DNA of 64,000 nucleotides, from contig NC_090404.1 in the NCBI RefSeq assembly GCF_036365525.1, forward strand, positions 7,192,001 to 7,256,000, in the 5' to 3' direction. This DNA is from Heterodontus francisci (lineage: Eukaryota). The notes under the pieces were generated by a model that searched no databases, was not told the origin of the DNA, and saw only the letters and a program-made list of their open reading frames with translations. Both the position numbers and the translations under genes were made by a program. Of this stretch, positions 18,408-64,000 are shown one piece after another (positions within the stretch are counted from its first letter, which is position 1; every line of letters begins with the position of its first letter).

Positions 18408-18738
18408 GTGTCCATTCGGATGTCGTGTTGACTCAGCCAGAGGCAGAGACCGGGAAACCTGGAGGCTCCCTGAGACTGACCTGTAAAACTAGTGGATTCA
18501 ATCTTGGCAACACCCGGATGTACTGGATATGACAGGTTCCCGGGCAGGGGCTGGAGTGGTTGGTTCACTACGATGCTTCATCCAGCAATAGTTACGCCCC
18601 AGAGATTAAGGATCGATTTACTGCGTCCAAAGACACTTCAAATAATATCTTCGCTTTGGCCATGAAGAACCTGAAGACCGAAGGCACCGCCATCTATTAC
18701 TGTGCAAGAAACATTACTACATTGGGTACACTGAGTGG
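18408..18738 (+). pseudogene. IGHV: Germline-joined IgM VH-D1-D2 segment with nonsense codon
   Basis: [27 protein letters not shown]...[12 protein letters not shown]...TAIYYCAR; TGA at 18530-18532 (CGA>TGA). CAR runs directly into D-like ATTACTACATTGGGT and ACACTGAGTGG with no V-RSS. Confidence 0.93.
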
Positions 18739-18766
18739 CACAGCAGTTACTGTCAATACAAAAACT
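18739..18766 (+). promoter_or_regulatory. 12-RSS (3' RSS of D2)
   Basis: CACAGCA + 12-nt spacer GTTACTGTCAAT + ACAAAAACT. Confidence 0.92.
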
Positions 18767-19071
18767 CCCTCAGCGCTAATTGAAGAGTCTGGGTCAGTGC
18801 TTGCTTTTACAATCCAACTATACATACAGTGAATTTCTATTTGTGTCCAGCACTGTCCTACTAGACGGTTTATTATGGATAAACTGATGAATTATTCATT
18901 CATCAGTTGGTGATTTCAATAATTGCTGATATGTTGCTGAGTGAAATATAAAACATCAGGATAATGTACCAACAGTGAAAAGAATCATTAGCGCAGTTAG
19001 AATTTACAATTTTAATCTGGGATGTGGATGTTTAAAATAATGAGGGCTTTATCTCCATTCTGTGCAGAGCC

Positions 19072-19110
19072 AGTTATTGTGTCACCCTGCCCAGGGAATG
19101 TAACACTGTG
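19072..19110 (-). promoter_or_regulatory. 23-RSS of JH
   Basis: AGTTATTGT + 23-nt spacer + CACTGTG. Confidence 0.88.
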
Positions 19111-19158
19111 ACACCATGGACTACTGGGGACAAGGGACCATGGTGACGGTGACTGCAG
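19111..19158 (+). other. IGHJ: JH segment (TMDYWGQGTMVTVTA)
   Basis: WGQG motif; donor GTAAGG at 19159. Confidence 0.96.
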
Positions 19159-25072: not shown

Positions 25073-25369
25073 CGACACCGTCTCCCCCAACCCTTTACGG
25101 CCTATGCTCCTGTGCACAAGCCAACACCGGTGGCTCCGTGGCCTATGGCTGTTTGGCGATGGACTAGATCCCCCAAATCACCAGCGTTTCCTGGAAGAAA
25201 GATAAAGAGCCGATCACCACTGGATTGAAGATTTACCCGTCAGTGCTCAACAAGAAGGGAACCTACACCCTGAGCAGCCAGTTAACCATCACCGAGTCAG
25301 AGGTGGGAAGCAGCAAAATCTACTGCGAGGTTCGACGCGGAGAGTCGCTCTGGATCAAGGAAATTCCAG
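25073..25369 (+). pseudogene. IGHM: IgM CH1 exon with nonsense codon
   Basis: [14 protein letters not shown]...[17 protein letters not shown]...[17 protein letters not shown]; TAG at 25165-25167; AG/GT intact. Confidence 0.95.
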
Positions 25370-25581
25370 GTTAGTGTTGTGGAAACTGTGGAAAAACATA
25401 AAAGCTATAGTGATCTTGTGTAGAGCTTTGGCTTTACGACATTTAGGGTATTGTGCACTGTTCTGATGCCAGGAAACTCCAGTTAGTATCTGCGTGACAA
25501 CAAATAACCTGTTAAAATAAAAGAACAGTTTGGATAAGTTATTAATGTCTTCGAGAAATATCTAACATGTTTTTCTTCAAG

Positions 25582-25899
25582 ATTGCAAAGGTGACATCGT
25601 CCATCCAACTGTTATCCTCACCCAGAGTTCCAGTGAAGAAATCACAAGCAGCAGATTTGCAACTGTCTTGTGTTCAATCATCGATTTCCAGCCAGAGTCA
25701 ATAACCGTGAGTTGGTTGAAGGATGGACAACCCATGGATTCGGGCTTCGCCACCTCTCCCGCCTGTGAAGTGAACGGGAACTTCTCGGCGACCAGTCGGC
25801 TGACTGTCCCCGCTGGGGGATGGTTCACCAACACGGTCTATACCTGCCAGGTCTCCCATCAAGAGGTCACCCAAAGCCGAAACATCACCGGATCTCAGG
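25582..25899 (+). pseudogene. IGHM: IgM CH2 exon (frame open)
   Basis: [15 protein letters not shown]...[17 protein letters not shown]...YTCQVSH...GSQ; 318 nt; AG/GT intact. Confidence 0.95.
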
Positions 25900-26629
25900 G
25901 TAAGAGACACAAACCGAGAAAACTCCAGATCATACTGTTCTCTGATGAATATCAAATTGAACAATTTATTGGAGTCAGTACAAAGCACTGAATATTTTTC
26001 CAATTCGCCATCGTGCCTCATTCCGCTGTGAGTGCTGAATTAGAATTGCTCACGGTTCAACATGTCATCACATCTCCAAAGAATGGCTCCCTCTGCTTTG
26101 ATGTCATATAGTGAGTCAGGTGGCCTTGCTTTCAGTTTTATCGTGATTTGGCCGATCATATTCAGAGCGGCAATAGGTGTCTGGAACTCTTTACTGTTCA
26201 CAACCTCGGGATCAAGTGCCAGAAAGAGCATCTTCCCTATTTAGAAAACTGTGTTCAATTCAGGACTCATGAGCTCAGGAAGGATATATTGTCATTGGGA
26301 GTGATGCAACACAAATTGAGTAGAATGATAGCGGGGCTGAACGGGTTAAATAAGAGGACAGGTTTCATTGACCAAACTGGTATTCCTTTGTGTATAGAAG
26401 ATTAAAGGGTGATCTACTTGAGGTGTTTAAGATGTTTACTGGAATTGATGGAGTCGAAGGCATAAACTTCAAATTAGACTAAGGTCATTCAAGGATGATA
26501 TCAGGAAAGTTATTCACACAGTGGGTAGCGGAAATCTGGAATTCTCTTCCTCAACTCGCTCTTGAAGTATGTCATCAATTCAAAATTTTCATGTCGAGAT
26601 TGACAGTTTAGAGTTCGGCAAGGGTATTT

Positions 26630-26920
26630 TTATTTAGAGATACAGCACTGCAACAGGCCCTTCGGCACACCATGTCTGCGCCAACCAACAATCACCCTAT
26701 TTATACTAACCCGACTTTCCCTACCACCTACCTACACTAGGCGCAATTTACAATGGCCAGTTTACTTATCACCTGCAAGTTTTTGGCTGTGGGAGGAAAC
26801 CGGAGCACCAACACATTCACAGGGAGAGCTGCCAAACTCCGCAAAGGTAGTGTCGAACCCAGAATCGAACCCACGTCGTTGGGACTGTGAGGCTGCGGAG
26901 CTAACCACGGTGCTATCGGT
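26630..26920 (-). mobile_element. HE1-type V-SINE inserted in an old CR1 fragment (~26230-27000)
   Basis: tRNA-like head (B-box-like gggttcgattc on -), V-domain and CR1 tail. Confidence 0.7.
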
Positions 26921-27747
26921 GGACGGTTTTAAGGTACAGATCAGCCAGTGTCCACTTGGATGGCTGAGCAGGCTCAAGGGCCAAATGGCCTGTTCTTTTT
27001 CTTCTGTTTCTATTACTGCCCTCTAGTCACATGGTCTTCTGACTCCAGACTGACATATGAGGAGTTCTCACTCATGACATACATCAGAAAACTGCCTTTC
27101 ACCGTTATTGCTAATTATTCCCCACCTCAAAAAGATTCCACAGAATTGCACTTTCCCGGCTTTTGCCCCTCCTCTGATTGGTTGCTGCATATTTTCATCC
27201 TCCCAAATATCGTGAGAAGGCGCTGGAAAATTAACGTTCTTCCCTGTTGGGTCTAAAATCCGGAATTCCATTTGACACTCGTTTTGAGCCAGTATGAATT
27301 CTATGTCTAGCTCGTGTCCTTGGGTGACAGGTGCGTTATATTCAGCGGAGATGTGATCGGGTGCAAGGATCAATGGACGGGCAGAAATACGAACATGCGA
27401 GCTTACGAGTTAGCAGTAGTAAGCCACTCGGCCCTTCTAGCCTGCTCCACCAGGGATTTCGGGAAGAACTTTATTCAGTGCGGACGCAATTTCTCACTCA
27501 ATTATTCGATTTTTAAGCCGGGTAATTGCTTCAAAGCCCATTGCAGGCTTCTTAGTGTGCAAGTACGCAGTATATGTTATAGAATCTCCCGGAAGCTTTT
27601 TCCGGTTGTTGTCCTTCCAATAAAGTGTAATATGTAAGTTACAGCTTGAGGTTGATATCTCGAAATTGATTTATTTTCCTAGAGGCTGTATACAGGTGTC
27701 TGATTCTGAAGATGAATCTTTGATTTATTTCCATTTCTGTTTTACAG

Positions 27748-28056
27748 TTCCTTGCTCCTGCAATGATCCAGTAATTAAAGTACTGCCGCCATCAATAGAA
27801 CAGGTCTTACTGGAGGCGACGGTGACGTTGACCTGCGTCGTGTCTCATGCTCCTTATGGCATCAACGTGTCCTGGACACAAGAAGAGAAGCCTTTGATAT
27901 CTGAGATTGCCGTCCAACCAGGAGAGGATCCCGACAGCGTGATCAGCAGCGTAAACATCTCGGCACAATCCTGGCTGAGTGGGGCTGTGTTCAACTGCGT
28001 GGTGAGCCATCAGGATCTGCCTACTCCTCTCAGAGATTCTATCCGCAAGGAAGAAG
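27748..28056 (+). pseudogene. IGHM: IgM CH3 exon (frame open)
   Basis: [30 protein letters not shown]...[14 protein letters not shown]; 309 nt. Confidence 0.95.
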
Positions 28057-28534
28057 GTGAGCGGTGAGATTGAAGCAATAAGTGAGAGGTTGCCCCTATT
28101 TCTTGTGATTGTGAAAGGGAAAATTCTTCTTAACAAGTGCTCCAATGAACAACCCCAATAATTTAATTGTAATTCTACGAACGGAGTCCTCTGGAATCAG
28201 AGGTGATGCATCTCAGGGGAAGTTAAATAGCAGATGAGAGAGAAATGATAGAAGGAGGAGAAGGAGTATTGGGTGCAGCATAAGAAATTGTACAGGCTAG
28301 CTGCGCAGAGGGGTCTTTTCCTGTGCTGTAAATTCTATGCAATTCCCCAGTGTAATAGCTTCGGTTCTCAGCGAGAAGGATTTGCTCCAGAGTGGAAAAC
28401 AGGACAGGCCCCAGTGGGGAAAAGGAAAACCGTTAAAATCCAGCACAAAGCACTATTCCTATCACATCTAACCACCAGTTTTATTCTCTCTGGAATTCTC
28501 CAGTTTATTGACATTTATTTTAATTTTTCTGCAG

Positions 28535-28925
28535 ATAAAGATCTGCAGGACCCTTCCGTGTCTGTCCTCCTGCCCCCGGCAGACGAAGTCTCCACTCAGA
28601 GATTCCTCTCCCTCACCTGCTCAGTGAGAGGTTTCTCCCCCAAGGAGATCTTCGTCAAGTGGACCGTCAATGACAAGTCGGTGAATCCCGGCAACTACAA
28701 AAACACCGAGGTGATGGGGAGAACGACAATAGCTCCTTCTTCATCTACAGCCTGTTATCCATTGCAGCGGAGGAGTGGACCAGCGGCGCTTCTTACTCCT
28801 GTGTGGTGGGACATGAAGCGATCCCCTTGAAGATCATCAACAGAACAGTTAATAAATCCAGCGGTAAACCGAGTTTTGTGAACATTTCCCTTGCACTGTT
28901 GGACACTGTCAATTCATGTCAATGA
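28535..28925 (+). pseudogene. IGHM: IgM CH4 and secretory tailpiece with 1-nt deletion
   Basis: [15 protein letters not shown]...; ATG G-G GAG at 28717 versus ATG GCG GAG in the paralog; tail [19 protein letters not shown]; internal TM donor G/GTAAA at 28864. Confidence 0.95.
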
Positions 28926-29994
28926 GAATCTCTCGATTGCATTTCAATCTTAAATACCTGTTCTTCCAATCGCGATTTAAATACACAACCGCTTAGTTAT
29001 TTTTGCTTGCCACATTTGCTAAGTGTAGGTCAATTCATCTAAAGTAGGATATTTGCAGATCTCGGGCTCAAGTCTTTTAGAACCAGTGCTCCCAGATACA
29101 CCACAGGTTGGCTGCAGAGCAAAGCTAATTCATTAGAGGATTCCGTTGAGTTACTTCGGCAACGTTTCCCCTGCTGGGGGAGGTCTGAATTTTTCCCTTC
29201 TCTAACAAACAAACGCAGGCATTTAGATCACAGTATCTCTGTTTCCCGTGTTGTCAGCCCCTTGAGAATTGGTGTCAGTTTTAAATTACAGCATAAGAAG
29301 CACTGGGAACTGAAGGGAGGGGCACACACCAACACCAAGTATACCAAAATCTCCCATCAGAAAGAGGGAAAAAGGCGATTTATTAACTCACTGTATCCCT
29401 ACTTTCTCAACATAAAGAAAGGAAAAGAACAATTGCTGTTCCATTGTAGCTCCACTTCTCCAATCGAGAGAAGGGAAAGGCAGTTGTCGCCCCTCTCCCC
29501 AATTTCTACAACAGAGAAAGGAGCAAAGCCATTTGTTAACCCACTATACTCCCACTCCCCGGATGGAGACATGAGAAGACAACTGCTCTCTATTAGATGG
29601 ACTCAGTTGCCATCGGTGCAAAGTCTGCTTCTAGTTCATTGTGCGAATGTTCAAACGTTCCACATGAGAATCATATTGTAAAATATATATGCATGCAATA
29701 TAATATTTTTAAACACTTCCTTGTTAATCTTATGCGACCAGATTGAATTCTAATCGTCCAAATCTGATTGTTGATCGAATCCTCCTCTGTTTTTTTCACG
29801 CTTGTGTTCCTGATGTTTCTGGGGCCCATCAGTTGTATTGCTGCGTGCATTCAGCTGATGTTATGTTGTATCTTGCACAGAATACATTTATGCACAGAAC
29901 AGTGAAGAATATTCTTTACAATACACACTGTCAAGGCCATGCTCGGATATTGGTTCTCAGTGGAACTTTGAAAAATAATAAAAATGCATTGGCA

Positions 29995-31520
29995 CACGGA
30001 CACAAACACACACATAAACACACTCGCATGCACAAATACACACATACAGCGACACACACGAACAGACCCAAACGCTGAAAGAAATGCTCCCACAGTCATA
30101 CACACAAACATAAACATAAGCACACACAAAGAACAAGAACAAAGAACAAAGATAATTACAGCACAGGAACAGGCCCTTCGGCCCTCCAAGCCTGCGCCGA
30201 TCCAGATCCTCTCTCTAAACATGTCGCCTATTTTCTAAGCTTCTGTATCTCTTTTCTTCCTGCCCATTCATGTATCTGTCTAGATACATCTTAAAAGACT
30301 CCATCGTGCCCGCATCTACCACCTCCGCTGGCAATGCGTTCCAGGTGCCCACTACCCTCTGCGTAAAGAACACGTTAGTACAGTCTCACGCACAACGAAA
30401 TCTAGACATAAAAGCATACACTAGGATACACATTAATACATATACATGGACGCACATGCTCGCAGATTAACAGATTCACACACACACACATAAGCACTTA
30501 GATAAATAGACACATTAACACACTCACTCATACACACATAATCACCAACATCAATATGCTGACACACATGGATACACAAACACACACATGAACACATACA
30601 ATATCACAAATGTGCACATACTCACACATTAACACACACATTAATACATAGTTATTACAAAGCACTGAATATTTTTCCAATTCGCCATTGTGCCTCATTT
30701 TTTTTTGCGAGGAGCAGCTTTGACAGAACGAGGTGCGGAGCGAACTTGCAGCTGAGCGGTCAATTTCAGTAAGTTACAAATCAATCCCCTTTTGTTTCGG
30801 AGGACCAGGGGACTGCTGGGTAAGGGAAAACTATTTATTTGGGCAGTTTTAAAATCTTTTTCTTTTTGCGAGGAGCAGCTTTGACAGAACGAGGTGCAGA
30901 GCGAACTTACAGCTGAGCGGTCAATTTCAGTAAGTTACAAGTTAATCCCCTTTTGTTTCGGAGGACCAGGGGACTGCTGGGTAAGGCACATACTCACACA
31001 TTAACACACACATTAATACATAAATGTCGTTATCAACACGTAAATTTACACATTATTACAATTCTAGGGGCACACACACACACACATAAAGAAACACATC
31101 ACCTATGCATGCACTTATATTGACACGTATAAACACATTAACTCACAGGGACACATTAACGCAACCATCAACACAAAAACACGGATTACCAAACTCATCG
31201 GGACACAAACACACACATAAACAAATATTAACATGCTCAGGCACGTATGGACAGATCGACAAAACACACACAGACTGTCACTTGAATACACACTTCAATG
31301 CACATTGGCACATTAACATCCATTACCATACATGGACACATAGACACAGCAGCAACATATAAACAAGCTCATTAATATACTCACACTTGTGTACACAAAC
31401 AAACAACTGAACACTTTCATTAATACTCACACAAACGCACACATGGATACGCAAACACAGTGTAATGAAAAGCAAGAGATACTCATGCCCAGATACACAA
31501 ACACTCAAGTGCACAAATAA
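29995..31520. repeat. CA-rich low-complexity tract in the CH4-TM intron
   Basis: Degenerate (CA)n; paralogous TG-rich tract at ~61560-62490. Confidence 0.85.
30126..30370 (-). mobile_element. CR1 3' tail insertion
   Basis: Reverse complement of 11580-11815; absent at the paralogous site ~62360. Confidence 0.85.
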
Positions 31521-32113
31521 AAAGGCCAGATTACAGGCAAGAGCATTATTCAAATGCACTGTTTCAACAGACACCGTCTCCAACAATTTCCCTCATACAT
31601 TTTGGACCTGCAATCACAATGAAGTAATATTCTCAAAGAAACTGCGATAAATTGATGATTTCCCAACTACTTTCATGAGAAATAAACAAACAAGATTGGA
31701 ATTCACATCCGATCCCTTACTCAACACCACTGACAATCTCCAAGTAAGTAACTGTCTGATCCCTATCTTCAAAATAATTGTTATCGATCTGTAAACCTCC
31801 CTCGTTATCTTCTCGTATTCCCTAATGATGGAACGAAATTGATGCAAAATAAAATAGAGCCTGACACTAAAGAAAAAAGAAACTGACACGTTTTCCAACA
31901 CGGCCTGCATGAGGATGATAAAAGAAGAACGGCTGTGGATTTAATAAGAGAGAGAGATTGCTGAGCATGAATAACAACAATAAATAAGCATTGACAATTA
32001 AATTAAAGAACAAAATAACAGCTGAAGGAAGAGAACTCCAAATACAAAGTAACAATCTTAGATCCTGGAGTGATAAATCATCGAAATACATTTTCTCCTC
32101 TACATCTGCGTAG

Positions 32114-32241
32114 ATTCCTCAGACCACATCTGGATTGAAGACAATGAGGAAAAGAGCGGCAACATCTGGAGAACCGCTTCCACATTCATCATCCTGTTCT
32201 TCCTGAGCATTTTCTACAGTGCTGCCGTCACTCTGGTGAAG
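32114..32241 (+). pseudogene. IGHM: IgM TM1 exon, splice donor mutated
   Basis: DSSDHIWIEDNEEKSGNIWRTASTFIILFFLSIFYSAAVTLVK followed by TTGAGA; the paralog has GTGAGA. Confidence 0.93.
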
Positions 32242-32385
32242 TTGAGAATATTCAATCCACTCACACTTCAATTTGACTGAAGCTGTTTGACAAATCTCGA
32301 AAAGTTTCATAGATTTAAAAAATAGTCTGAGATAAATATCCAGACCACGAAACCTCTGCTTCATTCTTTTATCCCTCTTTTACAG

Positions 32386-32394
32386 GTCAAGTGA
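32386..32394 (+). pseudogene. IGHM: IgM TM2 exon, coding part (VK*)
   Basis: ttttacag/GTC AAG TGA. Confidence 0.9.
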
Positions 32395-33677
32395 TCGATT
32401 GAATTTCGGTCGCCCTGAATTTTCCTCATTTTCTAACATCTCTGTATTACTCAAACAAACTGTAAAAGTAAAATTCCAACAGTTGATGGTTCTGAAACTG
32501 TAACTGAGAAATTCAGAAACATTATTTCCGTTTTTCTCTTTGTAATGTTTGAGATAATCGTGGCTTTAATGTAAATATGTTTTCGAATTTGACCTTTGTT
32601 TGAACTTGATGTGTAAATAAGTAAATATTCCTGATTCACAATTGTGTCCTTCACTTTACGTTGAGCCATTTTTTGTCTCTCTGGTCTTGTTACAGTTTTA
32701 CAGACAGCTGGCAGCTCATGTGTTCTGTTCTCAGTTTATCGCACAGTTGTTACATTCAGTTTCGACCTTTCCCTTAAAAAAACGGAATTCTCTGTAAAAT
32801 GCTCCTGTTGAAATTGTTAATAATCTTGAATATGGACGAACATGGACTTGCTGAATTCCTGGTGCCAATGACAACACTGTTCCATGTTCCCTATTACACG
32901 TTTTCCCATTTCCTAGACAGCTATTTTTCACCAGTTCTGTCTGGGTTGTGTTTGAACACAATGCCCTTCAGTGAAGGAGCCGCTGCGCCATCCATAGCCC
33001 CATTAGATTAAAGACACATTTCCCCCTGCCTTATTATGTCAATCGCCAGAGACAGAATGACTGCACAGTGACAAAGAACACCTTGCTGACTTCTCCCATC
33101 ATATGGTCTATCACAGTCACATGCCAGGTTATATTAAAGAGCAGCACTCTGCTCCCACACAGCCTGATATGTACAATATGGAAGAATACTGTTCCATCAA
33201 TATTTTACAGGGCAGATATGGCACTGCTTTGATAGAGAGTAAATCTCCCTCTTCACTGTCCCATCAAACACTCCCAAGGCCGGTACAGCACAGGTTAGAT
33301 ACAGAGTAAAGCTTCCGATAAACAGTACCATCAAACAGGGCAGGCATTGCCCGGTGTACATACTGTGTAAAACTCCTTCTACAGCGAAACATAGACATAG
33401 AAACATATAAAATAGGAGCAGGAGTAGGCCATTTGTCCCTTCGAGTCTGCTCCACCATTCATTATGATCAGTAGCCTGTTCTGGCTTTCGCACCATACCC
33501 TTTGACCTCTTTATTCCCAAGAGCTATATATAACTTCTTTCTGAAAATATACAAAGTTTCGGACTCAACTGCTTTCGATGGTAGCGAATTCCACAGGCTC
33601 ACCACTCTCTGGGTGAAGAAATTTCTCCTCATCTCAGTACACTGTCCCATCAAGCACTCCAGGACAGTAGCAGCACA

Positions 33678-52049: not shown

Positions 52050-52115
52050 GGAAGTGACGTTGAACCAATAGGAGCCTCTGACGGAATTGTTCCGGTGCAG
52101 GATTGGCCTTTTAAA
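52050..52115 (+). promoter_or_regulatory. TCR V-type promoter (ETS/CRE, CCAAT, TATA-like)
   Basis: GGAAGTGACGT at 52050-52060, CCAAT at 52065, TTTTAAA at 52109-52115; ~30-90 bp upstream of the leader. Confidence 0.55.
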
Positions 52116-52140
52116 GAGACCGACAGGTTCGGTCTCGGCA

Positions 52141-52577
52141 ATGGCCATGCGGATATTCAGCGCCTGGGTTGTGTGTGCGGTGTTTATACTTGGTAAGGAT
52201 GACTTCAATCATGTTGTCTCCAAATTACTGTGTTAATATTATTTCAGTAACGCCTTTTAATTCTCGATCTTGTCTTCGTCCTGAACGCATGTTACAGATC
52301 AAAGTGATGGCGATACTGTTACTCAGTCCCAGTCTTCAGAAAGCGGGAGAGAAGGTGAAGCAGTGACTATAAGATGTACCTATAGCACAGGTATTAGTTA
52401 TATTGGTACCGGCAACAAGCAGAAAAAGACTCTCAGTTTGTTGTGTGGAGATGGTCTGGGGATACACGACAATTGAAAGGAGAAGATCTTGGAATTCGTT
52501 TCTCTGCTGAGCTCCAGACCGCGACTAAATTCACCAGTTTAACTATCTCGGGTCTGCAGCTGACTGACTCTGCCGTT
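52141..52577 (+). pseudogene. TCR alpha/delta-type V pseudogene 1 (leader 52141-52192, V exon from 52298), 3'-truncated
   Basis: MAMRIFSAWVVCAVFIL/gtaagg; DTVTQSQSSESGREGEAVTIRCTYST, frameshift at ~52399, then YWYRQQAEK...RFSAELQTATKFTSLTISGLQLTDSAV; no YYC or RSS. Confidence 0.88.
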
Positions 52578-52969
52578 CTCCTTCCTTCACCATCAGTGGA
52601 TTAAAGTCATATTGCCTTTATTGCCAGTCTCCAATTACCCTGAGATGAAGACTCCAGCCCCAAACGGATGATGTAGACTTTTAATAGCTTTGTGTCATGG
52701 ACCCGCAAGACGGGCAATTGTAAAAGTGCAAGTAAAAATGGAAAATAGATGCCATTCTTAACAGCACCAACCAGGTCCGGGGACTGAATACAAAAAATCA
52801 CATGAGCCAATTCAACACCTGACTAACATCATCTCACACTGATCATTGCACCCGTTCTCCTTCCTTCACCATCAGTGGATTAAAGTCAAACAACATTCTC
52901 CATGAAATCAGTGTGATACTTCACGAATATTGTACCGGGTGCTCTGCGTTTCAGATCTTCACATTCAAG

Positions 52970-54110
52970 AACACAAGAAATAGGAGCAGGAGTAGACCAT
53001 GTGGCCCATCGAGCCTGCTCCGACATTCAATACAATCATGGTTGATCTTAGACTTCAACTCCACTTTCCTGTCCCTTGATTCCCTGAGAGACCAAAAAAC
53101 TGCCTATCCCAGTCTAAAAATTATTCAACGATGGAGCATTCACAACCCTCTGGGGGAGAGAATTCCAAAGAATAACAACCCTTTGAATGAAGTAATTTCT
53201 CCTCATCTCAGTCCTAAATGATCGTTGCCTTCTCCTTAGACTGTGTCCCCGTGTTTTAGATTCCTCGATCCACGAATACAATCTCACAGTTCCTATCCTA
53301 TTCAGCCCCGTCAGAATCTTGAATGTTTCAATGAGATCGCCTTTCATTCTTCTAAACTGCAGAGAACATAGGCCCAATGTACTCATTGTACTCTCATCAT
53401 TAGAAAATCCCCTCAACCTAGGGACCAGTTTAGTGACCCTTCGCTGTACCGCCTCCAGTGCAAGTATATTCTTTCTTCCATGTGGAGACCAAAACTGCAG
53501 CCAGTATTCCAGGTGCGGTCTGACCAAACCATGTACAATTTTAGTAAGACTTCTTTATTCCTGTACTCCAATCCCCTTTCAATGAAGGCCAACATGCCAT
53601 TTGCCTTCCTAATTGCTTGCTGTACCTGCATGTTAACTGTCTGTGTTCTTTGCACAAGTACACCCAAGTCTCTTTGAACATCAACACTTACAAGTTTCAC
53701 ACCTTGAAAAAAATATTCTGCTTTTCTATTCTCACCGCCAAAGCGAATAACTTCACACTTCCCTACATTATATTGCATCTGCAATCTTGTTGCCCGCTCA
53801 CTTAACCCGTCTATATCTCTTTGCAGCCTCCCTGTATCCTCCCGACAGCGTACCTTTCCATCCATCTTTCTAGCCACAGCAAACTTAGATACATTATCCT
53901 CTGTTCCTTCATTTATGTCATTGATAGATTGTAAATAGCTGAGGCCACAGAGCTTATCCTTGTGGCACTCCACTATTCACTGCCTGCCAACTTGAAAATG
54001 CCTTATTCATGGCCACTCTTTGCTTCCTGTACATAAACCAATCCTCTATCCAGGCTAATATATTAACCGAAACGCAATAAGCCCTTGTCTTGCCTATTAA
54101 CCTTTTGTTT
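52970..54110 (-). mobile_element. 5'-truncated CR1 LINE
   Basis: ORFs 53114-53527 and 53413-53973 (RT C-terminus motifs). Confidence 0.88.
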
Positions 54111-54155
54111 GAATATTGAACTGCGGGGTCCCAGTGTGGGGATACTGCGGCCGTT

Positions 54156-54442
54156 ATGGAGTTTGGGCTTTTCGCTTTCTGGGCTCCTCTGGTATTGTTG
54201 TTTGATTATTATATTTGTGTTTATTACTGCGACTTTCTGCACATTCCACTATTGATAGAACTGACGTACATTCATCTACCTCTAGTTCTATTAGCCTCTC
54301 TGTCTATCTATCTGCCTGTATTATTATATTTCCAACTATCCCACTCTTCCCCTGTTAGTCAATCAATTCATCTTCGGCTGCTTCCTTTGTCTCCGGACCA
54401 AGGTTTCCTTAAAATGAGAAGCATATTATCTCTTCTACCTAC

Positions 54443-54495
<53 letters not shown>

Positions 54496-54853
54496 GATCT
54501 ATCGATCTCTCTGTCTATTATCTATTCGACGTTCTGCATCCACGGTTAACCAGGAATATTTTTTGCGGGTGTGAGTTATGGTGACTCTGTCAGACAGTGG
54601 CCAACAGAAGCCCAATATTTGGAAGGAGTTTCGATGAGCATTAATTGTATCTATTCAAACTCCAATGTGAGCTATTCTGTGCAGCTTTATCGTCGGAGCC
54701 AGAATATGGCTTCCACTTTCGGAATTCAGGCATATTCCTATGGAATGTACGAAGTTAACGGTCATTCTGGAAACGTTCGCAATTCGAGCTTTTCTCATCG
54801 TGACTGGGCTGCAGCTCGTTGACAGCGCCCTGTACTACTGTGTCTTAAACCTA
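54156..54853 (+). pseudogene. TCR alpha/delta-type V pseudogene 2 (leader 54156-54204, V exon 54569-54853)
   Basis: MEFGLFAFWAPLVLLF with donor GT>AT; acceptor CAG>CGG; GDSVRQWPTEAQYLEGVSMSINCIYS..., frameshift before ~54793, then LIVTGLQLVDSALYYCVLNL. Confidence 0.85.
54443..54494. repeat. (TATC)n microsatellite in the V leader intron
   Basis: Direct reading. Confidence 0.95.
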
Positions 54854-54890
54854 CACAGAAAAAGACCTCGGGATACTTCGTACAAATACC
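54854..54890 (+). promoter_or_regulatory. Damaged 23-RSS of TCR V 2
   Basis: CACAG[TG missing] + 23 nt + ACAAATACC. Confidence 0.75.
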
Positions 54891-54904
54891 GTGTTCTGTA
54901 AGGT

Positions 54905-57250
54905 CTTTGGTAGGCGGTGAAGGAACCAATAGGAGGGGAAAATATACTTGCCCTTGTCCTAACCAATCTGTCTGCCGCACATGCATCTGTCCATGACAAT
55001 ATTTGTACGAGTGACCACCGCACAGTCCTTGTGGAGACAAAGTCCCGTCTTCATCATGAGGATACCCTCCATCGTTGTGTGGCACGACCACCGTGTTAAA
55101 TGAGATAGATTTCGAACAGACATAGCAATGCAAAACTGAGCATCCATGAGGCGCTGTGGGCCATCAGCAGCAGCAAAACTTTACAACTGCAATCTGTAAC
55201 CTCATGGCCCAGCATAATCCCCAGTCTATCATTGTGAATCATCAGCGAACATCCCCACTTCTGATCTTATGATTGAAGGAAAGCCAGGGAACCAACCCTG
55301 GCTCAATGAAGAGTGCAGAAGGGCAAGCCAGAAGCAGCACCAGGCATACCTCAAAATGAGGTGTCAACCTGCTGAAGCTGCAACACAGGACTACTTGCTT
55401 GCCAAACAGCGTAAGCAGCATGCGATAGACAGAGCTAAACGATCCCATAACCAACGGATATGATCTAAGCTCTGCAGTCCTGCCACATCCAGCCATGAAT
55501 GGTGGTGGACAATTAAACAACGAACCGAAAGAGGTGGCCACAAATATCCCCATCCTCAATGATGGGGGAGCACAGCATATCAGTGCAAAAGATAAGGCCA
55601 AATCAGTTGCAATAATCTTCAGCCAGAAGTGCCGAGTGGATGATCCATCTCAGCCTCCTCCTGAAGTCCCCAGCATCACAGATGCCAGACCGAAGGCACT
55701 GGATACTGCAAGGTGTATGGGACCTGACAACGTCCCAGCAATTTTACTGACGACCTGTGCTCCAGAACTTGCTGCGCCCCTAGCCAAGCTGTTCCAGTAC
55801 AACTACAACACTGGCATCTGCCCGGCAATGTGGAAAATTGCCCAGGCATGTCTGGTACTCTAAAAGCAGGCCAAATCCAACCCGGCCAATTACATCCGCC
55901 AAACCACCCCCCGCCCCCACCCCACCTCCCCACAAGTCCACGTTCAATCATCAGTAAAGTGATGGAAGGTGCCGTCGAAAGTGCTATCGTGCAGCATTTA
56001 CTTAGCAATAACCTGCTCAGTGACGCTACGTTTGGGTTCCGCCAGGGCCACTCAGGGGCCGACCTCTTTACAGCCTTGGTTCAAGCATAGAAAAAAGAGC
56101 TGAACGCAAGAGGTGAGGCGAGAGTGACTGCCCTTTACATCAAGGCAACATTTGACCGAGTATGACAGCAAGGAACCCTAGCAAAACTGAGGTCAATGGG
56201 AAACAGGGGAAAACTCTCCACTGGTTGGAGTCGTACCTAGCGCAAAGGAAGATGGTTGTCGTTGTTGGAGGTCAATCATCTCAGCTCCAGGACATCACTG
56301 CAGGCGTTCCTCAGGGTACTGTCCTAGGCCCCACCATTTTCAGCTGCTTCATCAATGACCTTCCTTCAATCATAAGGTCGGAAGTGGGGATGTTTGCTGA
56401 TGATTGCACAATGTCCAGCACCATTCATGACTCCTCAGATACTGAAGCAGTCCGTGTAGAAATGCAGCAAGACCTGGACAATATCCAGGCTCGGGCTGAT
56501 AAGCAGCAAATAACATTCGTGCCACACAAGTACCAGGCAATGACCATCTCCAACAAGATAGAATCTAACCATCTCCCCTTGACATTCAATGGCGTTACCA
56601 TCGCTGAATCCCCCACTGTCAACATCCTGAGGGTCACCATTGACCAGAAACTGAACTGGAGTAGCCATATAAGAGCTACAAGAGCAGGTCAGATGCGAGG
56701 AATCCTGCGGCAAGTAACTCACCTCTTGACGCTCCAAAGCCTGTCCACTATCTACAAGGCACAAATCAGGAGTGTGATAGAATACTCTCCACTAGCCTGG
56801 ATGGGTGCAGCTCCAACAATACTCAAGAAGTTCGACACCATCCAAGACAAAGCAGCCCGCTTGATTGTCACCACATCCACAAACATTCACTCCCTCCACC
56901 ACCGCACACAGTGGCAGCAGTGTGTACCACCTACAGGATGCACTGCAGCAGCGCACCAAGGCTCCTTCGACAGCACCTTCCAAACCCGCGGCCTCTACCA
57001 TATAGAAAGACAAGAGCAGCAAATGGTTGGGAACAACACCACCTGCAAGTTCCCCTCCAAGCCACACACCATCCCGATTTGGAACTATATCACCATTCCT
57101 TCCCTGTCGCTGGGGGAAATCCTGGAACTGCCTGCCTAACAGCACTGTGGGTGTCCCTACCCCACATGGAATGCAGCGATTCAAGAAGGCTACTCACCAC
57201 CACCTTCTCAAGGGCAATTAGCGACGCCCACATCCCATCAATGAAATAAA
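54905..57250 (+). mobile_element. LINE family B, long ORF2 fragment and tail
   Basis: SDH, GPDN, GVPQGTVLGP and MFADDCT motifs; ORF 56162-57139. Confidence 0.9.
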
Positions 57251-58450: not shown

Positions 58451-60692
58451 CCTCTCAGCACCTGTGACCCCGAACTCAGAACTGTGACCCCGAAGGGTTT
58501 CGTCTCGACATCTTAAAGGGGGCGTCACCAGTGAGACTGGTGCCTGGAAAAAGGACAGAAAGACCGAGAGACACAGCGAGGGAGGCTAAAGCTAAATATA
58601 GCTTAGAGGGCAGGACGGCCCAGAATGATAGTGGTGGGGGAGGAGTGGGGGGAGAGATTGGAGCAGAGAAAGAGTTCAAGCATCAACGCCACCCAGTCCC
58701 AAATATAATTCTGAGCCGTTAAGAAGGGTCGTTAATTCTTCTCTGCCTGAATCTGATTTGATATTCAACCACAGGAGACCTCGCGCCTGAACATCAGGAG
58801 TGCAGAGAAAAATGCATTCAAAGGACAATGTCGGAAGATACTGGGGTCGGAACAGAAAGCTCTGGTGATGTTCCCGTGACCGGGAGGTACCGAAAGAATC
58901 TGATGAGACAGTGACGAAGGAGGAGAGAAATTTCAATTTGTGAAAGTATGAGGTTCACTGGCGGATCCCGGGGCTAATTTTTAGGGAGATGGTATAAGAG
59001 GGAATAGAGCAGGGAGAGAGGATCCCTGGTGTGATGTTCAGTGAGTTCAGGGAGATGGTATCAGATGGAATCGAGCAGAGAAGAGAGAAAGGTCATCAGA
59101 GAAACATGTGACAGAGGGGCAGGGGTAACAGGTATTGCAGAAAAGGTGAAGGCAGAAAGTTGGCGTGTGCATAACAGAAAAGTGGAGAGTGTATGTGAGA
59201 CAGATTAGCTGGAGTGTGCGGGTTGTGTGAATAACAGAAAATGTGAAGACAGAGTCTCTGTATCTGATAGACCTCAGTCTCCTGGAATCATTCCTCCAAT
59301 TTGTGCTCTCTTTTGTGTCAGATGTGCCCCAGGCTCTGGGAATCATTCCAGGGATTGTGCTCCCCTGTTTGTCAGATCGGCTTCAGGCTTTGGAAATTAT
59401 TCCCAGGAATTTTCCTCCCCTGTTTGTCACATAGTTTTTGGGCATGGGAAATCATTACCCGGGGTCGTCCTCTCTGGTTCATTAGATAGGCCCAAGGTTC
59501 TGGCATCATTCTTAGAATTTGTGCTCCTTGTCGTATCAGATAGACCCCGGCTCTTGAAATAATTCCCAGCATTTGTGTTCGATGGTATATTGTGTCAGAT
59601 ATGCACCAGTCTCCAGAAATCATGCCAGGGTTTGTGCTCTCTCATGTGTTATATATCTAACCTGTGCTGTATCTGTTCTGAGAATGTTTAAAGGAACAGT
59701 GCAGAGAGAGCTCCCCTGTGTAACTAACCTGTGCCGTGCCTGCCCTGGGAGTGTTTGATGGGACAGTGGGGACGGAGATTTACTCTGTTTCGAACCGGTG
59801 CTTTGCCTGTCCTGGGAGTGTTTTATGGGAGAGTGCAAAGCGAGCTTTATTCCCTATCAAACCTGTAACGTGCCTGTCCTGGAAAGGTTTGATGGGACAG
59901 TATTCCTCCATGTATCAGACTGCGATGGAGCAGAGCGCTGCTCTTTAATATAACCTGGCACATGACTGTGGCAGACCATAAGATGGGAGAATTCAGTGAG
60001 GTGCTCCTGGTCACTGTCCGGTCATTCTGCCACTGGGAGTGGCAAGATACGGCAGAACGAAAGGTGTCTTTACTCTGAAGGGACTCTGGTTGGCACTGCA
60101 GCTCCTTCACCGAAGAGCCTTGGGATTAAACGCAACCCGGACAGGACTGGTGCCATATTGCTGTCAGGAAAGTGAGGAAACGTGTAATCGGGAAAAGGGA
60201 GCTGTGTAGAGGGTCATTAGGGCAAGGAATTCAGTCAAGTCCAAGTTAGTCCATGTGTTACTCAATATTTATTAACAATTTTAAAAAAGAACATTTTACA
60301 GAGAGGATTTAAAGAAAGGTCCAAAATGAATATAACAACTTTACGTCACATTGAGTACAGAACACATACGATCTGAGCTGCCAGCTCTCTGTAAAACTGT
60401 AACAGAGCAGAGAGAGAAAACGGAGCTCAACATAAAAAGGGACCACTTGTGAATAAGGAATAGTTACTTATTTACACATGAAATTCAAACGAAGGTGAAA
60501 CTCGAAGACGCATTTACATTAGAGCCACGATTATCCCACATATTTTAAAGAGGAAAACGGGAATACTATTTATGATTCTCTCAGCTACAGATTCAGAACT
60601 ATAAATTGAAGGCATTTTACTGTTGGTGTTTTTCTGTTATGCAGAGATGTTTAAAAAACGAGGAAAATCCAGGGTGGCATAAATTCACTCGA

Positions 60693-60701
60693 TCACTTGA
60701 C
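60693..60701 (-). CDS. IGHM: IgM cluster 2 TM2 (VK*)
   Basis: ttttacag/GTCAAGTGA on -. Confidence 0.9.
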   Translation of the reverse strand, partial: VK

Positions 60702-60840
60702 CTGTAAAAGAGGGATAAAGGAGTGAAGCAGAGATTTCGTGGTTCGGGACATTCATCTCAAGGTTAAATTTATGAAACTTTTAGAGATTTGCGAAACAAC
60801 TTCAGTTAAATTGAAGTGTGAGTGGATTGAATATTCTCAC

Positions 60841-60968
60841 CTTCACCAGAGTGACGGCAGCACTGTAGAAAATGCTCAGGAAGAACAGGATGATGAATGT
60901 GGAAGCGGTTGTCCAGATGTTGCCGCTCTCTTCCTCATTGTCTTCAATCCAGATGTGGTCTGAGGAAT
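60841..60968 (-). CDS. IGHM: IgM cluster 2 TM1 exon, intact
   Basis: DSSDHIWIEDNEEESGNIWTTASTFIILFFLSIFYSAAVTLVK; AG and GTGAGA intact. Confidence 0.95.
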
Positions 60969-63541
60969 CTACGCGGATATAGAGGAGGAAATATATTCAA
61001 ATAGTTTATTAATCCAGCATATATTTTGCATTCGAATGTCTCTTCCTTCAGCTATTATTGGTTTTCTAATTTAATTTTCAATGTGTGGCTATTAAGTTAA
61101 TCATGCTCAGTAATCTATCTCTGTTACCAACTCCACAATTATTCTTCCTTTATCATCGTCCTCCAGGCCTTATTGGAAAATGTGTCAGTTTTTTCTTCAG
61201 TGTCAGGCGCTTTTTTATTTTAGATGCAGTTGCGGTTTTTCTTAAGGGATTATTATGGTGAAATATGAGATATCGAGGGAGGTTTACTGATCGATAACAA
61301 TTATTTTGAAGATGGGTTCGGATATCTACTTATTTGGAGATTGTCAATTGTGCTGAGTAAGAGCTCGGATGCGAGTTCCAATCTTATTTGTATGTGATGA
61401 ATGTCGCTTGAAAATCATTTACATTCCTCAGTTTCTAAGTGAGAATTTTGCTTCGTTATCTTTTTAGGTCCACCGTGCATTCGGGAAGTTGTTGGAGATG
61501 GTGTCCATTCAATCAGTGCATTTGAATTCTACTTTCGTCAACAGCCTGGCGATTTTGTCTGCGCATTTAGTGTTTGTGCAAATGTGTACGAGTATCTTCC
61601 TTTGCATCACTCTCTGTTTCCATGTGTACGTGTGTGTGTGTGAGTGTTAATGTGTGGGAACAATGTAGTTGTTTGGGTGCCCATGTGTGTGTCAATGCGC
61701 GTGTTTATATGTTAATGCCTGTGTGTATGTGTCCATGTATGTTAGTGTGTTAATGTGCCAATGTGCATTGATTTGTGTAATCAAGTAGCCGTCTGTGTGT
61801 GTTTGGTGTGTGTGTATGTGTGTGTTTGTGGTGTGTATATGTGTGTGTGTAAGTCTATGTGAGTTGTGTTTCTTTATCCGTCTTTGTTTATGAGCGGTTG
61901 ATGTTTATTTATGTCGGTGTCTGTGTCCCTATGCGTGTGTTAATATCTGTGTTTCTGTGTTGATGGATGTGTTTATGTTTCCCTGTGTGTCAATGTGTGT
62001 TTATATGTCCATGTGTGTGTGCTAATGTGTTATTTATGCCTGCTTGTGTCCCCATGAGTGTGCAAATGTATGTTTTTGTTGATGTCTACGTTTATGTATT
62101 AATGCATATATTAATGTGTGTTTATGTGAGCATGTGTGTGAATGTATGTGCTGATGTGCGCGCTTGTGTATCCATGTTAATATTGGTGTCTATTTGTTTG
62201 TGAATGAGTGTGTTAATGTGTTAGTGTGTCTGTTTATCTGTGTGCATATGTACGCGAGTCTGTTAATATGCGAGTGTATGTGTCCATGTATGTGTTAATG
62301 TGTGTGATAGTGTGTGCTTTTATGTCTAGGTTTCTGCTTTCGTGAGACTGTACTAACGTGTGCATTTATGTTCGTGTTTGCGTATGTGACTGTGGGAATC
62401 TTTCTTTCAGCGTTTGGGTTTGTTTGTGTATGTAGATGCAAATGTGTGTTTGTACATGTGCGTGTGTTTATGTGTTTGTTTATGTCCGTGTGCCTGTACA
62501 TTTTTATTATTAAACGAAATTTCAGAGAGTACAAATAACCACGTCTAGCCCTGACGGTGTGCACTGCAGAGAATATTCTTTATCGTTCTGTGCGTAAATC
62601 TATTCTGTGCGAGATGCAATATGACATCAGCTGGATGAATGCAACAATGAAAATGATGGGCCTCAGCACAACAGGAATAGTGGATGATTAAATCACCAGT
62701 TAGATTTAGACTATTGGAATTTAATCTGTCAGGGAACGTGGCCAACAGGAAAATGTTTTAAGATATCATGTTGCATAAAGATATATTTTGCAATATGTTT
62801 CCCATTTGGAATGTTTAAACCTTCGTACAGTGAACTGGAAGCCGACTTTGAACTGATGGCAATTGAATCCGATCATGAAGAGCAGTTGGCTTCCAATCTC
62901 TCTGCAGGGGGAGTGGGAGTATAGTGGGTTAACAAATGCCCTTACTCCTTTCTCTTTCGAGGAATTGGTGAGGGGTGGGGGGCCTATTACAGTAGTTCCA
63001 CAATTGCCTTCCTTCTCTATTGGTGAAGTGGAGGAACAGTGGATTAACAATTACCCTTTCCCCCTCTCTGTTTAGGATGTGGATCAATAGTAGATTAATA
63101 AATTGTACTTTCCCCTCTTTCTGATGGAGAATTGTGAGTGCAGATCGTACTTGTGTGTGGCCTTCGGTTCAGTTCCCAGAGCCTGTGATGCTGAAACTGC
63201 AAACTGACCTCAATACCGAAGGGGTGGACAACACGAGAAGCAGGAATACCGATATCTAAATGCACTTCGTTTGTTCGTTAGAAAAGGGAAATTTTCAGAT
63301 ATCCCCAGACAAGGCAGGAGGAAAGCTAAGTTGCTGGTGTTACCTTCCGGAATCCTGTAATGAATCAGTTTTCCTCTGTCGCTAACCTGTGGGATCTGAG
63401 TTGGGAGCACTGATTGCACAAGACTTGGGCCCGAGACCTGCAAATATCCCACTTTAGATGAATAGATCTACCCTTAGAAAATGTGGGAAGCAGAATTAAT
63501 TGAGCGCTTGTGTATTTGAATCGTGATTGGAGGAAAATGTC

Positions 63542-63557
63542 TTTATTGATTTTTATT
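63542..63557 (-). terminator. Secretory poly(A) signals (two AATAAA)
   Basis: tttatt at 63542-63547 and 63552-63557, 30-45 nt after the stop. Confidence 0.8.
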
Positions 63558-63585
63558 TAAGAATTAAAATGCAATCGAGAGATTC

Positions 63586-63977
63586 TCATTGACATGAATT
63601 GACAGTATCCAACAGTGCAAGGGAAATGTTCACAAAACTCGGTTTACCGCTGGATTTATTAACTGTTCTGTTGATGATCTTCAAGGGGATCGCTTCATGT
63701 CCCACCACACAGGAGTATGAAGCGCCGCTGGCCCACTCCTCCGCTGCAATGGATAACAGGCTGTAGATGAAGTAGGAGCTATTGTCGTTCTCCGCCATCA
63801 CCTCGGTGTTCTTGTAGTTACCGGGATTCACCGACTTGTCATTGACGGTCCACTTGACGAAGATCTCTCGGGGGGAGAAACCTCTCACTAAGCAGGTGAG
63901 GGAGAGGAACCTCTGAGCGGAGACATCGTCTGCCGGGGGCAGGAGGACAGATACGGACGGTTCCCGCAGATCTTTAT
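63586..63977 (-). CDS. IGHM: IgM cluster 2 CH4 and secretory tail, intact (the rest of the gene is beyond the window)
   Basis: [15 protein letters not shown]...[11 protein letters not shown]...[19 protein letters not shown]; acceptor at 63978-63979. Confidence 0.96.
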
Positions 63978-64000
63978 CTGCAGAAAAATTAAAATAGATA

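What the first reader, a model, noticed from the sequence alone, without database searches (positions are those of the whole stretch)
52050..54890. T-cell-receptor alpha/delta-type V genes lying between two IgM heavy-chain clusters
Seen: two V pseudogenes that the ORF track shows only in part, with leader exons, TCR-type frameworks (DTVTQ..EGEAVTIRCTYST..YWYRQ..LTISGLQLTDSAV; GDSVRQ..EG.SMSINCIYS..GLQLVDSALYYC), an ETS/CRE promoter and a 23-RSS remnant. They sit ~6 kb from the TM2 of an intact-looking IgM. Known: sharks use IgH V segments in TCR-delta chains (IgHV-TCRdelta rearrangements, NAR-TCR, TAILV), attributed to Ig-like Vs within the TCR alpha/delta locus. Inference: this is the reciprocal arrangement, TCR Vs interleaved with IgM clusters that have C exons. 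Either IgM clusters are intermixed with the TCRAD V array, or a TCR V block was transposed here. A + strand V with a 23-RSS could in principle join by inversion to the 12-RSS D of the - strand cluster, giving a TCRV-D-J-Cmu chimera. Both Vs here are dead, so functional relatives would have to lie elsewhere.
Basis: partly seen in the sequence, partly recalled or inferred. Interest (0 to 1): 0.85.

Follow-up and report, generated by a model that had tools for sequence, protein, structure and literature searches.

The report
Dead TCR-type V genes between IgM clusters
Two broken T-cell-receptor-type variable gene relics lie in the spacer between two shark IgM antibody gene clusters; the layout is real, but it was already published for other sharks and rays, and these copies cannot function.

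Summary
V1 (52141-52577, +) has a leader exon, a 105-nt intron and FR1-FR3. It is 79% identical to the V region of a rearranged TCR-delta cDNA (P0024) and 72-79% identical to a sawshark TCR-delta model (P0001). V1 is dead: CDR1 is out of frame, and the gene stops after "LTDSAV", with no second cysteine and no RSS. V2 (54569-54890, +) keeps both cysteines and an RSS remnant (CACAGAA-21 nt-ACAAATACC). It lacks Trp41, has a frameshift and has a shortened FR3. Its TCR alpha/delta assignment is favoured but not proven (AU p 0.05-0.15).

Both relics sit in a roughly 26-kb, LINE-filled spacer between two convergent IgM clusters. The + cluster is itself a pseudogene. DNA contigs from the same sample reproduce both frameshifts. 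The two probable RNA runs show no transcript of either V.

The scan's own unchecked notes describe the same layout repeatedly on this chromosome piece. The proposed TCR-V-Cmu chimera is geometrically possible but has no support here. Verdict: a new instance of a known arrangement, of low interest.

The parts
52050..52074 (+). Upstream motif block of V1: GGAAGTGACGTT (ETS core plus CRE half-site) followed by GAACCAATAGGAG (CCAAT box). It lies 67-91 bp before the first ATG.
   Evidence: Read; motif scan. Function not tested.
52141..52192 (+). V1 leader exon (M-A-MRIFSAWVVCAVFIL plus 1 nt). The GT donor is at 52193 and the intron is phase 1.
   Evidence: The leader matches the P0001 leader MRIFSAWIVFAVFIM.
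52193..52297 (+). V1 leader intron, 105 nt, GT...AG.
52298..52577 (+). V1 exon 2: leader part 2, FR1, CDR1, FR2, CDR2, FR3. The frame breaks in CDR1: 26 nt separate the Cys23 codon from the Trp41 codon, against 33 nt in relatives. The exon ends after LTDSAV, with no Cys104 and no RSS.
   Evidence: DNA contigs cover it with 0 gaps.
52573..52888 (.). A 37-nt perfect direct repeat (52573-52609 and 52852-52888) flanking 242 nt of sequence that looks unique. The first copy starts inside the last V1 codons and marks the truncation point.
   Evidence: only 2 copies in the window; 0 expected. Word depth matches the unique flanks.
52889..54115 (-). 5'-truncated non-LTR retrotransposon (LINE) fragment between V1 and V2.
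   Evidence: ORFs. 47% identity to another LINE copy that carries RVT_1. Word depth 1e3-1e5 in the DNA runs.
54569..54853 (+). V2 exon 2: (G)VSYGDSVRQ...INCIYS...LYRR (Trp41 lost). There is a frameshift between 54740 and 54800, FR3 is about 11 residues short, and it ends ...GLQLVDSALYYC (Cys104 at 54839-54841) VLNL. The expected acceptor reads GG at 54567-54568.
   Evidence: DNA contigs cover it with 0 gaps.
54854..54890 (+). V2 RSS remnant: heptamer CACAGAA, 21-nt spacer, nonamer ACAAATACC.
54917..57250 (+). Second LINE (the end of the endonuclease domain through RT), starting 27 nt after the V2 RSS.
   Evidence: ORFs; RVT_1; word depth.
18419..33317 (+). IgM cluster on the + strand: VH, JH at 19125, CH exons, TM1 at 32185-32220. 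It is a pseudogene, with TGA in VH FR2 at 18530-18532 and a 1-nt deletion in CH4 after 28717.
59716..64000 (-). 3' part of the IgM cluster on the - strand: CH4 plus secretory tailpiece at 63888-63589 (open), TM1 at 60897-60862, and 3' flank. The rest lies beyond the window end.

Best explanation
These are two decayed, non-functional relics of rearranging TCR alpha/delta-type V genes. They lie in the same orientation in the roughly 26-kb retrotransposon-filled spacer (33.3-59.7 kb) between two convergent IgM miniclusters.

V1 belongs to a V family that is used with C-delta in real cDNAs. It was disabled by a net 7-nt loss in CDR1 and by loss of everything after FR3 at a rearrangement/LINE junction. 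V2 is a more diverged and more decayed V of probably the same class.

They are local debris of the extended elasmobranch antigen-receptor complex, in which IgH miniclusters and TCR alpha/delta-type V exons are interleaved near the TRA/TRD locus. They do nothing now. When intact, such V genes would have served TCR delta/alpha by long-range V(D)J joining (inferred).
For: Shown:
- The V1 FR2-FR3 piece finds only chondrichthyan V-set proteins among 1.84e9 representatives. The best is P0001 (72% identity, E 7e-16).
- P0001 and P0024 match full-length TCR-delta chains best in the PDB (E 2e-37 and 2e-35, against about 1e-22 for alpha chains).
- V1 is 79% identical to P0024, which is a rearranged V-D-J-C-delta sequence (45/57 and 19/24 residues).
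- V1 gives no alignment to the window's own VH beyond chance.
- In the tree, V1 joins P0024, P0001 and P0025. V1 and V2 both lie on the TCR side of a 97/97 branch that separates them from VH and IgL.
- Most V2 hits in the PDB are TCR-alpha chains, although antibody chains are far more numerous there.
- Lesions.
- The frameshifts are reproduced without gaps by DNA contigs of the same sample, at the word depth of unique flanks.
- No contig from the two probable RNA runs lies on the V1 leader, on most of V1 exon 2 or on V2.
- IgM clusters lie on both sides.
- The arrangement is published for four other elasmobranchs.

Unchecked leads:
- The scan's own notes describe IgM clusters next to TCR alpha/delta V arrays from -2.9 Mb to +6.2 Mb on the same piece, and NAR-TCR 0.6-1.3 Mb away.
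Against: - The class of V2 is not settled. It has a branch length of 2.07. AU tests do not clearly reject V2 with VH (p 0.051), with IgL (p 0.081) or outside the TCR group (p 0.15).
- No TRB or TRG V references were available.
- Linkage to TRDC/TRAC rests on a paper about other species and on unchecked notes.
- Long-range contiguity was not tested independently, because the DNA contigs break at repeats and come from the same sample as the likely assembly source.
- The RNA status and tissue of the two runs are unknown, so silence is weak evidence.
Confidence: 0.85

Rival explanations
1. The V genes are part of a working cis Ig/TCR chimera system. TCR-type V genes lying inverted downstream of an IgM cluster would join by inversion to the cluster's D-J and give TCR-V-D-J-Cmu chains. 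These two copies would be dead members of such a system.
For: The geometry is valid. The V genes are on the + strand with the RSS on the 3' side, convergent with the - cluster. Inverting the D-J-C block would place V-D-J-Cmu on one strand, as happens with the inverted V gene downstream of C in the TRB and TRD loci (mentioned). A V gene with a 23-RSS fits a D 5' 12-RSS (established rule).
Against: V1 has no RSS. The V2 RSS has a 21-nt spacer and the heptamer CACAGAA. Both coding regions are broken. No RNA contig lies on them. The held literature reports Ig V joined to TCR-delta, never the reverse. Nothing in this window shows use.
Confidence: 0.03
2. V2 is not a TCR alpha/delta V. It is another class: one of the V types 'intermediate' between TCR and Ig, an IgL-like V or a TRG/TRB-like V. 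Only V1 would then support the finding.
For: V2 has a very long branch. The AU tests do not reject other placements. A word-based search found no homologue. The Atlas search gave only generic Ig-superfamily leads. The paper notes V domains intermediate between TCR and Ig in these regions.
Against: The N-terminus GDSV.Q and the end GLQL.DSA.YYC match the shark TCR alpha/delta V set. V2 aligns colinearly to the TCR-V HMM. Its PDB hits are mostly TCR alpha. The best tree places it inside the TCR group.
Confidence: 0.2
3. The interval is an assembly misjoin that wrongly brings TCR V DNA next to IgM clusters.
For: The region is rich in LINEs. No single DNA contig spans the stretch, and the contigs come from the same sample.
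Against: Local contigs agree with the window across V1, the unique 242-nt segment, the LINE edges and V2. The same layout is published in four species. It is also noted many times along this chromosome piece (unchecked).
Confidence: 0.04
4. A small TCR V block was copied or transposed secondarily into this IgM spacer, rather than the IgM clusters being embedded in an ancestral extended V array.
For: There are only two V genes here, both dead and flanked by retrotransposons. A 37-nt direct repeat at the V1 breakpoint shows local rearrangement.
Against: V1 and V2 are different V families (70% mean column identity in a DNA alignment with many gaps). A single recent copy event is therefore unlikely. 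The interleaving recurs over megabases according to the notes and across species.
Confidence: 0.15

Closest known systems
Elasmobranch antigen-receptor complex (AgRC) of Flajnik et al. 2025, Sci Adv (PMC12227049)
   Same: IgM miniclusters with TCR alpha/delta-type V exons between them, on a chromosome that (per unchecked notes) also carries NAR-TCR and TCR V arrays.
   Different: The species here is probably the horn shark, which was not among the four analysed. The paper gives no detail on single V genes. The two here are pseudogenes, and one flanking IgM cluster is also dead.
TRDV/TRAV gene family of cartilaginous fish (for example the V of TCR-delta cDNA P0024 and of the sawshark model P0001)
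   Same: V1 shares the leader, FR1, FR2 and an identical 27-residue FR3 with P0024. The exon structure is a leader exon, a phase-1 intron and a V exon.
   Different: In V1 the CDR1 is out of frame and Cys104 and the RSS are missing. V2 is only 31-38% identical to any member and lacks Trp41.
Inverted V gene downstream of the C region (TRDV3 and TRBV30 in human; established knowledge, and mentioned)
   Same: A V gene lies 3' of the C exons in the opposite orientation, which would be used by inversional joining.
   Different: There the V and C genes belong to one locus and the V gene is functional. Here the V is TCR-type, the C is Cmu, and the V genes cannot rearrange.
Ig V-TCR-delta trans-rearrangements, TAILV and NAR-TCR in sharks
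   Same: All reflect physical mixing of Ig and TCR-delta gene segments.
   Different: Those cases are Ig-type V genes used by TCR delta and are expressed. This case is TCR-type V genes next to Ig C genes, with no expression.

Membership tests
Rearranging TCR alpha/delta V gene (V1) | Nearest relatives are V regions used with C-delta or C-alpha | tested here: met
   79% identity to P0024 and 72-79% to P0001. Both match full-length TCR-delta chains best in the PDB. The tree groups V1 with them.
Rearranging TCR alpha/delta V gene (V1) | Leader exon, short phase-1 intron, V exon | tested here: met
   Leader 52141/52147-52192, GT/AG intron of 105 nt, exon 2 from 52298.
Rearranging TCR alpha/delta V gene (V1) | Open V-set domain with Cys23, Trp41 and Cys104 | tested here: not met
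   Cys23 and Trp41 are in different frames, and there is no Cys104. V1 is therefore a pseudogene of the family, not a working member.
Rearranging TCR alpha/delta V gene (V1) | 23-RSS at the 3' end | tested here: not met
   The RSS scan finds none near V1, and the gene is cut at 52577.
Rearranging TCR alpha/delta V gene (V2) | Groups with TRAV/TRDV rather than other V classes | tested here: inconclusive
   The best tree places it inside the TCR group, but AU p is 0.051, 0.081 and 0.15 for the alternatives. No TRB or TRG references were available.
Rearranging TCR alpha/delta V gene (V2) | 23-RSS at the 3' end | tested here: inconclusive
   CACAGAA-21 nt-ACAAATACC lies directly after YYCVLNL. This is a remnant with a spacer 2 nt short.
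Rearranging TCR alpha/delta V gene (V2) | Open V-set domain with Cys23, Trp41 and Cys104 | tested here: not met
   Both cysteines are present, but Leu replaces Trp41, there is a frameshift, and FR3 lacks about 11 HMM positions.
IgH V (VH / TAILV) | Sequence groups with VH | tested here: not met
   V1 has no significant alignment to the window VH. VH plus the VH-like domain of P0003 form their own 99/96 clade.
AgRC-type interleaving (TCR alpha/delta-type V between IgH clusters) | IgH clusters with C exons on both sides of the V genes | tested here: met
AgRC-type interleaving (TCR alpha/delta-type V between IgH clusters) | Linkage to the TRA/TRD locus and PSMB5 on the same chromosome | not testable with these tools
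   Only one window is readable. Unchecked scan notes place NAR-TCR and TCR V arrays 0.6-6 Mb away.
Expressed Ig/TCR chimera | Transcript joining a TCR-type V to Cmu | tested here: not met
   No contig from the two probable RNA runs of the same sample lies on V1 or V2. The only RNA contig touching V1 FR3 is a germline transcript of a paralogous V gene. This is a weak test.

The most novel reading that the evidence does not exclude
Elsewhere in this interleaved region, intact TCR alpha/delta-type V genes that lie inverted just downstream of live IgM clusters may occasionally be joined by inversion to the cluster's D-J. That would produce TCR-V-D-J-Cmu heavy chains, the mirror image of the known Ig V-TCR-delta chains. 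The two relics here would be decayed members of that pool.
Probability: 0.04. Interest if true: 0.8.

Novelty: new member of a known kind. Interest (0 to 1): 0.2.

Why it matters
It adds one more example, probably in a fifth species, of TCR alpha/delta-type V exons scattered among IgH miniclusters. That layout bears on how Ig and TCR-delta share V genes and somatic hypermutation in sharks. The window also shows that such spacers decay: two dead V genes, one dead IgM cluster and several LINE insertions. On its own it opens no new question. Value would come only from a locus-wide census, or from finding TCR-V-Cmu transcripts.

Tried and rejected
- A word-based homologue search with the long V2 piece found no candidate.
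- An ESM Atlas search with V2 gave only generic Ig-superfamily leads below 0.85.
- Pfam on the short pieces gave V-set hits below the gathering threshold.
- PDB searches with the short V pieces were weak (E 0.001-0.1). They are used only for the class make-up of the hits.
- Criscitiello 2010 and Deiss 2019 are not held, so I could not check whether reciprocal TCR-V-Ig-C products were sought.
- The supplementary table of PMC12227049 is not held.
- I considered a third V promoter after V2, because the 13-mer GAACCAATAGGAG occurs only at 52062 and 54923. The second copy falls within an open reading frame that runs on (54917-55099) into what I read, by eye, as LINE endonuclease-type sequence; Pfam found no family in it. 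The alignment does not extend. No claim is made.
- I considered that GTTTATTACTGCG at 54219-54231 is the displaced YYC end of V1. The context does not fit FR3, so this was rejected as unproven.
- The leader and exon 2 were never joined for any search. The two frame pieces of each V exon were searched separately by reference. They were joined, with X at the break, only inside scripts for the tree.
Full report
**What is there**

The window is elasmobranch DNA, 44% GC, with no gaps. The finding lies on the + strand and covers two V-type immunoglobulin-domain gene relics.

V1 anatomy:
- The leader exon runs from 52141 or 52147 to 52192 and reads MRIFSAWVVCAVFIL. A GT donor follows at 52193.
- The intron is 105 nt and ends in AG at 52297.
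- Exon 2 reads QSDGDTVTQSQSSESGREGEAVTIRCTYSTGISY. After a frame break it reads WYRQQAEKDSQFVVWRWSGDTRQLKGEDLGIRFSAELQTATKFTSLTISGLQLTDSAV.
- Only 26 nt separate the Cys23 codon from the Trp41 codon. Relatives have 11 codons (33 nt) there. CDR1 therefore carries a net 7-nt deficit (an inference from the proteins).
- After DSAV the V sequence stops. A perfect 37-nt direct repeat (52573-52609 and 52852-52888) brackets 242 nt.
- Next comes a 5'-truncated LINE on the - strand, about 52889-54115. Its ORFs are 47% identical to another LINE copy in the window that carries RVT_1.
- V1 has no Cys104 and no RSS.

V2 anatomy (exon 54569-54853):
- It reads (G)VSYGDSVRQWPTEAQYLEGVSMSINCIYSNSNVSYSVQLYRRSQ.... 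After a frameshift somewhere in 54740-54800 it reads ...FLIVTGLQLVDSALYYCVLNL.
- Leu stands where Trp41 should be.
- About 11 FR3 positions of the V HMM are missing.
- The expected phase-1 splice acceptor reads GG (an inference).
- Directly after the coding end lies CACAGAA, a 21-nt spacer, then ACAAATACC, at 54854-54890. This is an RSS remnant with a spacer 2 nt short of 23.
- A second LINE starts 27 nt later.

An HMM of 20 TCR-type V domains, run over all six frames, finds only V1, V2 and the IgM VH in the 64 kb.

**What class of V**

The V1 FR2-FR3 piece was scored against 1.84 billion representative proteins. It returned 22 hits. The ten whose source names were looked up are all cartilaginous-fish entries or unnamed UniParc records.

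- The best hit, P0001, is a sawshark gene model, 72% identical at E 7e-16.
- A follow-up search found P0024, an old UniParc entry that is a rearranged V-D-J-C sequence.
- V1 is 79% identical to P0024 in both pieces. The 27-residue FR3 is identical.
- P0001 and P0024 match full-length TCR-delta chains best in the PDB: E 2e-37 and 2e-35 over nearly their whole length. Alpha chains score about 1e-22.
- V1 gives no meaningful alignment to the window's own VH.
- In a maximum-likelihood tree, V1 sits with P0024, P0001 and P0025. A 97/97 branch separates all TCR-type rows, including V1 and V2, from VH and IgL.

V1 is therefore a pseudogene of a V family that is used with C-delta.

V2 is much more diverged:
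- Its best identities are 31-38%.
- Its N-terminus and FR3 end carry the motifs of the shark TCR alpha/delta set.
- Most of its PDB hits are TCR-alpha chains.
- Its branch is long, and AU tests do not clearly reject other placements (p 0.051, 0.081 and 0.15).
- I had no TRB or TRG V references.

V2 is probably, not certainly, TCR alpha/delta-type.

**Surroundings**

- A + strand IgM cluster spans about 18.4-33.3 kb: VH, JH at 19125, C1-set exons and TM1 at 32185.
- This + cluster is itself a pseudogene. It has TGA in VH FR2 at 18530-18532 and a 1-nt deletion in CH4 after 28717, relative to the other cluster.
- A - strand IgM cluster enters from the window end. Its CH4 plus tailpiece exon at 63888-63589 is open and matches Ig mu chains at E about 1e-36. 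TM1 is at 60897-60862.
- The two clusters are 77-80% identical from CH4 to their 3' flanks and 95% identical in CH4. Homology ends at 33317 and 59716.
- The V genes therefore lie in a spacer of about 26 kb between two convergent clusters. V2 ends 5.97 kb from the - cluster TM1 exon.

**Are the lesions real, and are the V genes used**

- Logan contigs of two DNA runs from one sample cover V1 (51900-52574 and 52145-52541) and V2 (54595-55003) with no gaps. Their word depth equals that of the unique flanks. The LINE reaches 1e3-1e5.
- The frameshifts are therefore not indel errors of the window sequence. The sample may be the one the genome was assembled from, so this is not independent proof of long-range contiguity.
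- Two probable RNA runs of the same sample have no contig on the V1 leader, on the first part of V1 exon 2 or on V2.
- The only RNA contig touching V1 (52496-52576, 4 mismatches) runs on into sequence that translates to ...YYCAFRLTVM, with a CACAGTG heptamer.
- That contig is a germline transcript of a paralogous V gene. It matches the horn-shark models P0006 and P0023.
- This suggests the genome is Heterodontus francisci or a close relative (an inference).

**Comparison with what is known**

The scan's own unchecked notes describe IgM clusters next to TCR alpha/delta V arrays at many places from -2.9 Mb to +6.2 Mb on this same piece. One lies only 26 kb before this window. NAR-TCR elements are noted 0.6 and 1.3 Mb beyond it. 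I could not test these notes. They fit the published picture and argue against a single orphan insertion.

**The chimera idea**

The geometry is sound. A + strand V gene with a 3' RSS, convergent with the - cluster, could join the 5' RSS of D1 by inverting the D-J-C block. This is how the inverted V genes downstream of C-beta and C-delta are used (established knowledge; also noted).

Nothing here supports actual use:
- V1 has no RSS.
- The V2 RSS is degenerate.
- Both coding regions are broken.
- No transcript was seen.
- The held literature describes only Ig V joined to TCR delta.
- The two key primary papers were not held.

**Limits**

- Only one window is readable.
- The V reference sets lacked TRB and TRG.
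- Leader and V exons were searched separately by reference and never joined. Frame pieces were joined with X only inside scripts for the tree.

**Verdict**

This is a new instance of a known arrangement, made of pseudogenes.

Noticed in passing
window 18530-18532 and 28717/28718: The + strand IgM cluster is a pseudogene. It has an in-frame TGA in VH FR2 (WI*Q) and a 1-nt deletion in CH4 relative to the 95%-identical CH4 of the - cluster, which shifts the frame after ...NTEVM.
   Followed up: partly
window 52062-52074 and 54923-54935: The 13-mer GAACCAATAGGAG occurs exactly twice in 64 kb: in the V1 upstream region and 33 nt after the V2 RSS. The second copy lies within an open frame that continues into LINE-like sequence (a reading by eye; Pfam found no family). 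This may be chance or a relic of a third V promoter.
   Followed up: partly
window 54156-54233: Upstream of V2 there is an ATG with a hydrophobic leader-like peptide (MEFGLFAFWAPLVLL), and 60 nt further on the string GTT TAT TAC TGC (VYYC). Neither fits the V2 splice phase or an FR3 context.
   Followed up: partly
window 52496-52576 (run X12 contig): A 1250-nt contig from a probable RNA run of the same sample is an unrearranged (germline) transcript of a paralogous TCR-type V gene with an intact CACAGTG heptamer. It matches horn-shark models P0006 and P0023.
   Followed up: partly
window 51946, 52488, 54695, 54705, 54847: Single-base differences between the window and DNA contigs of the same sample, some at full depth. 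These are either the other haplotype or consensus errors.
   Followed up: no
window 2983-4001 (-): ORFs that read as a tandem C2H2 zinc-finger array lie upstream of the + IgM cluster.
   Followed up: no
window 35559-38054 (+): An 831-aa open LINE ORF with endonuclease and RT domains lies in the inter-cluster spacer. It may be a young retrotransposon copy.
   Followed up: partly
P0003 (Chiloscyllium punctatum GCC21065.1): A bamboo-shark gene model fuses a TCR-type V with a VH-like V. The VH-like domain is 51% identical to the window VH. The two V types are therefore adjacent in that genome as well.
   Followed up: no
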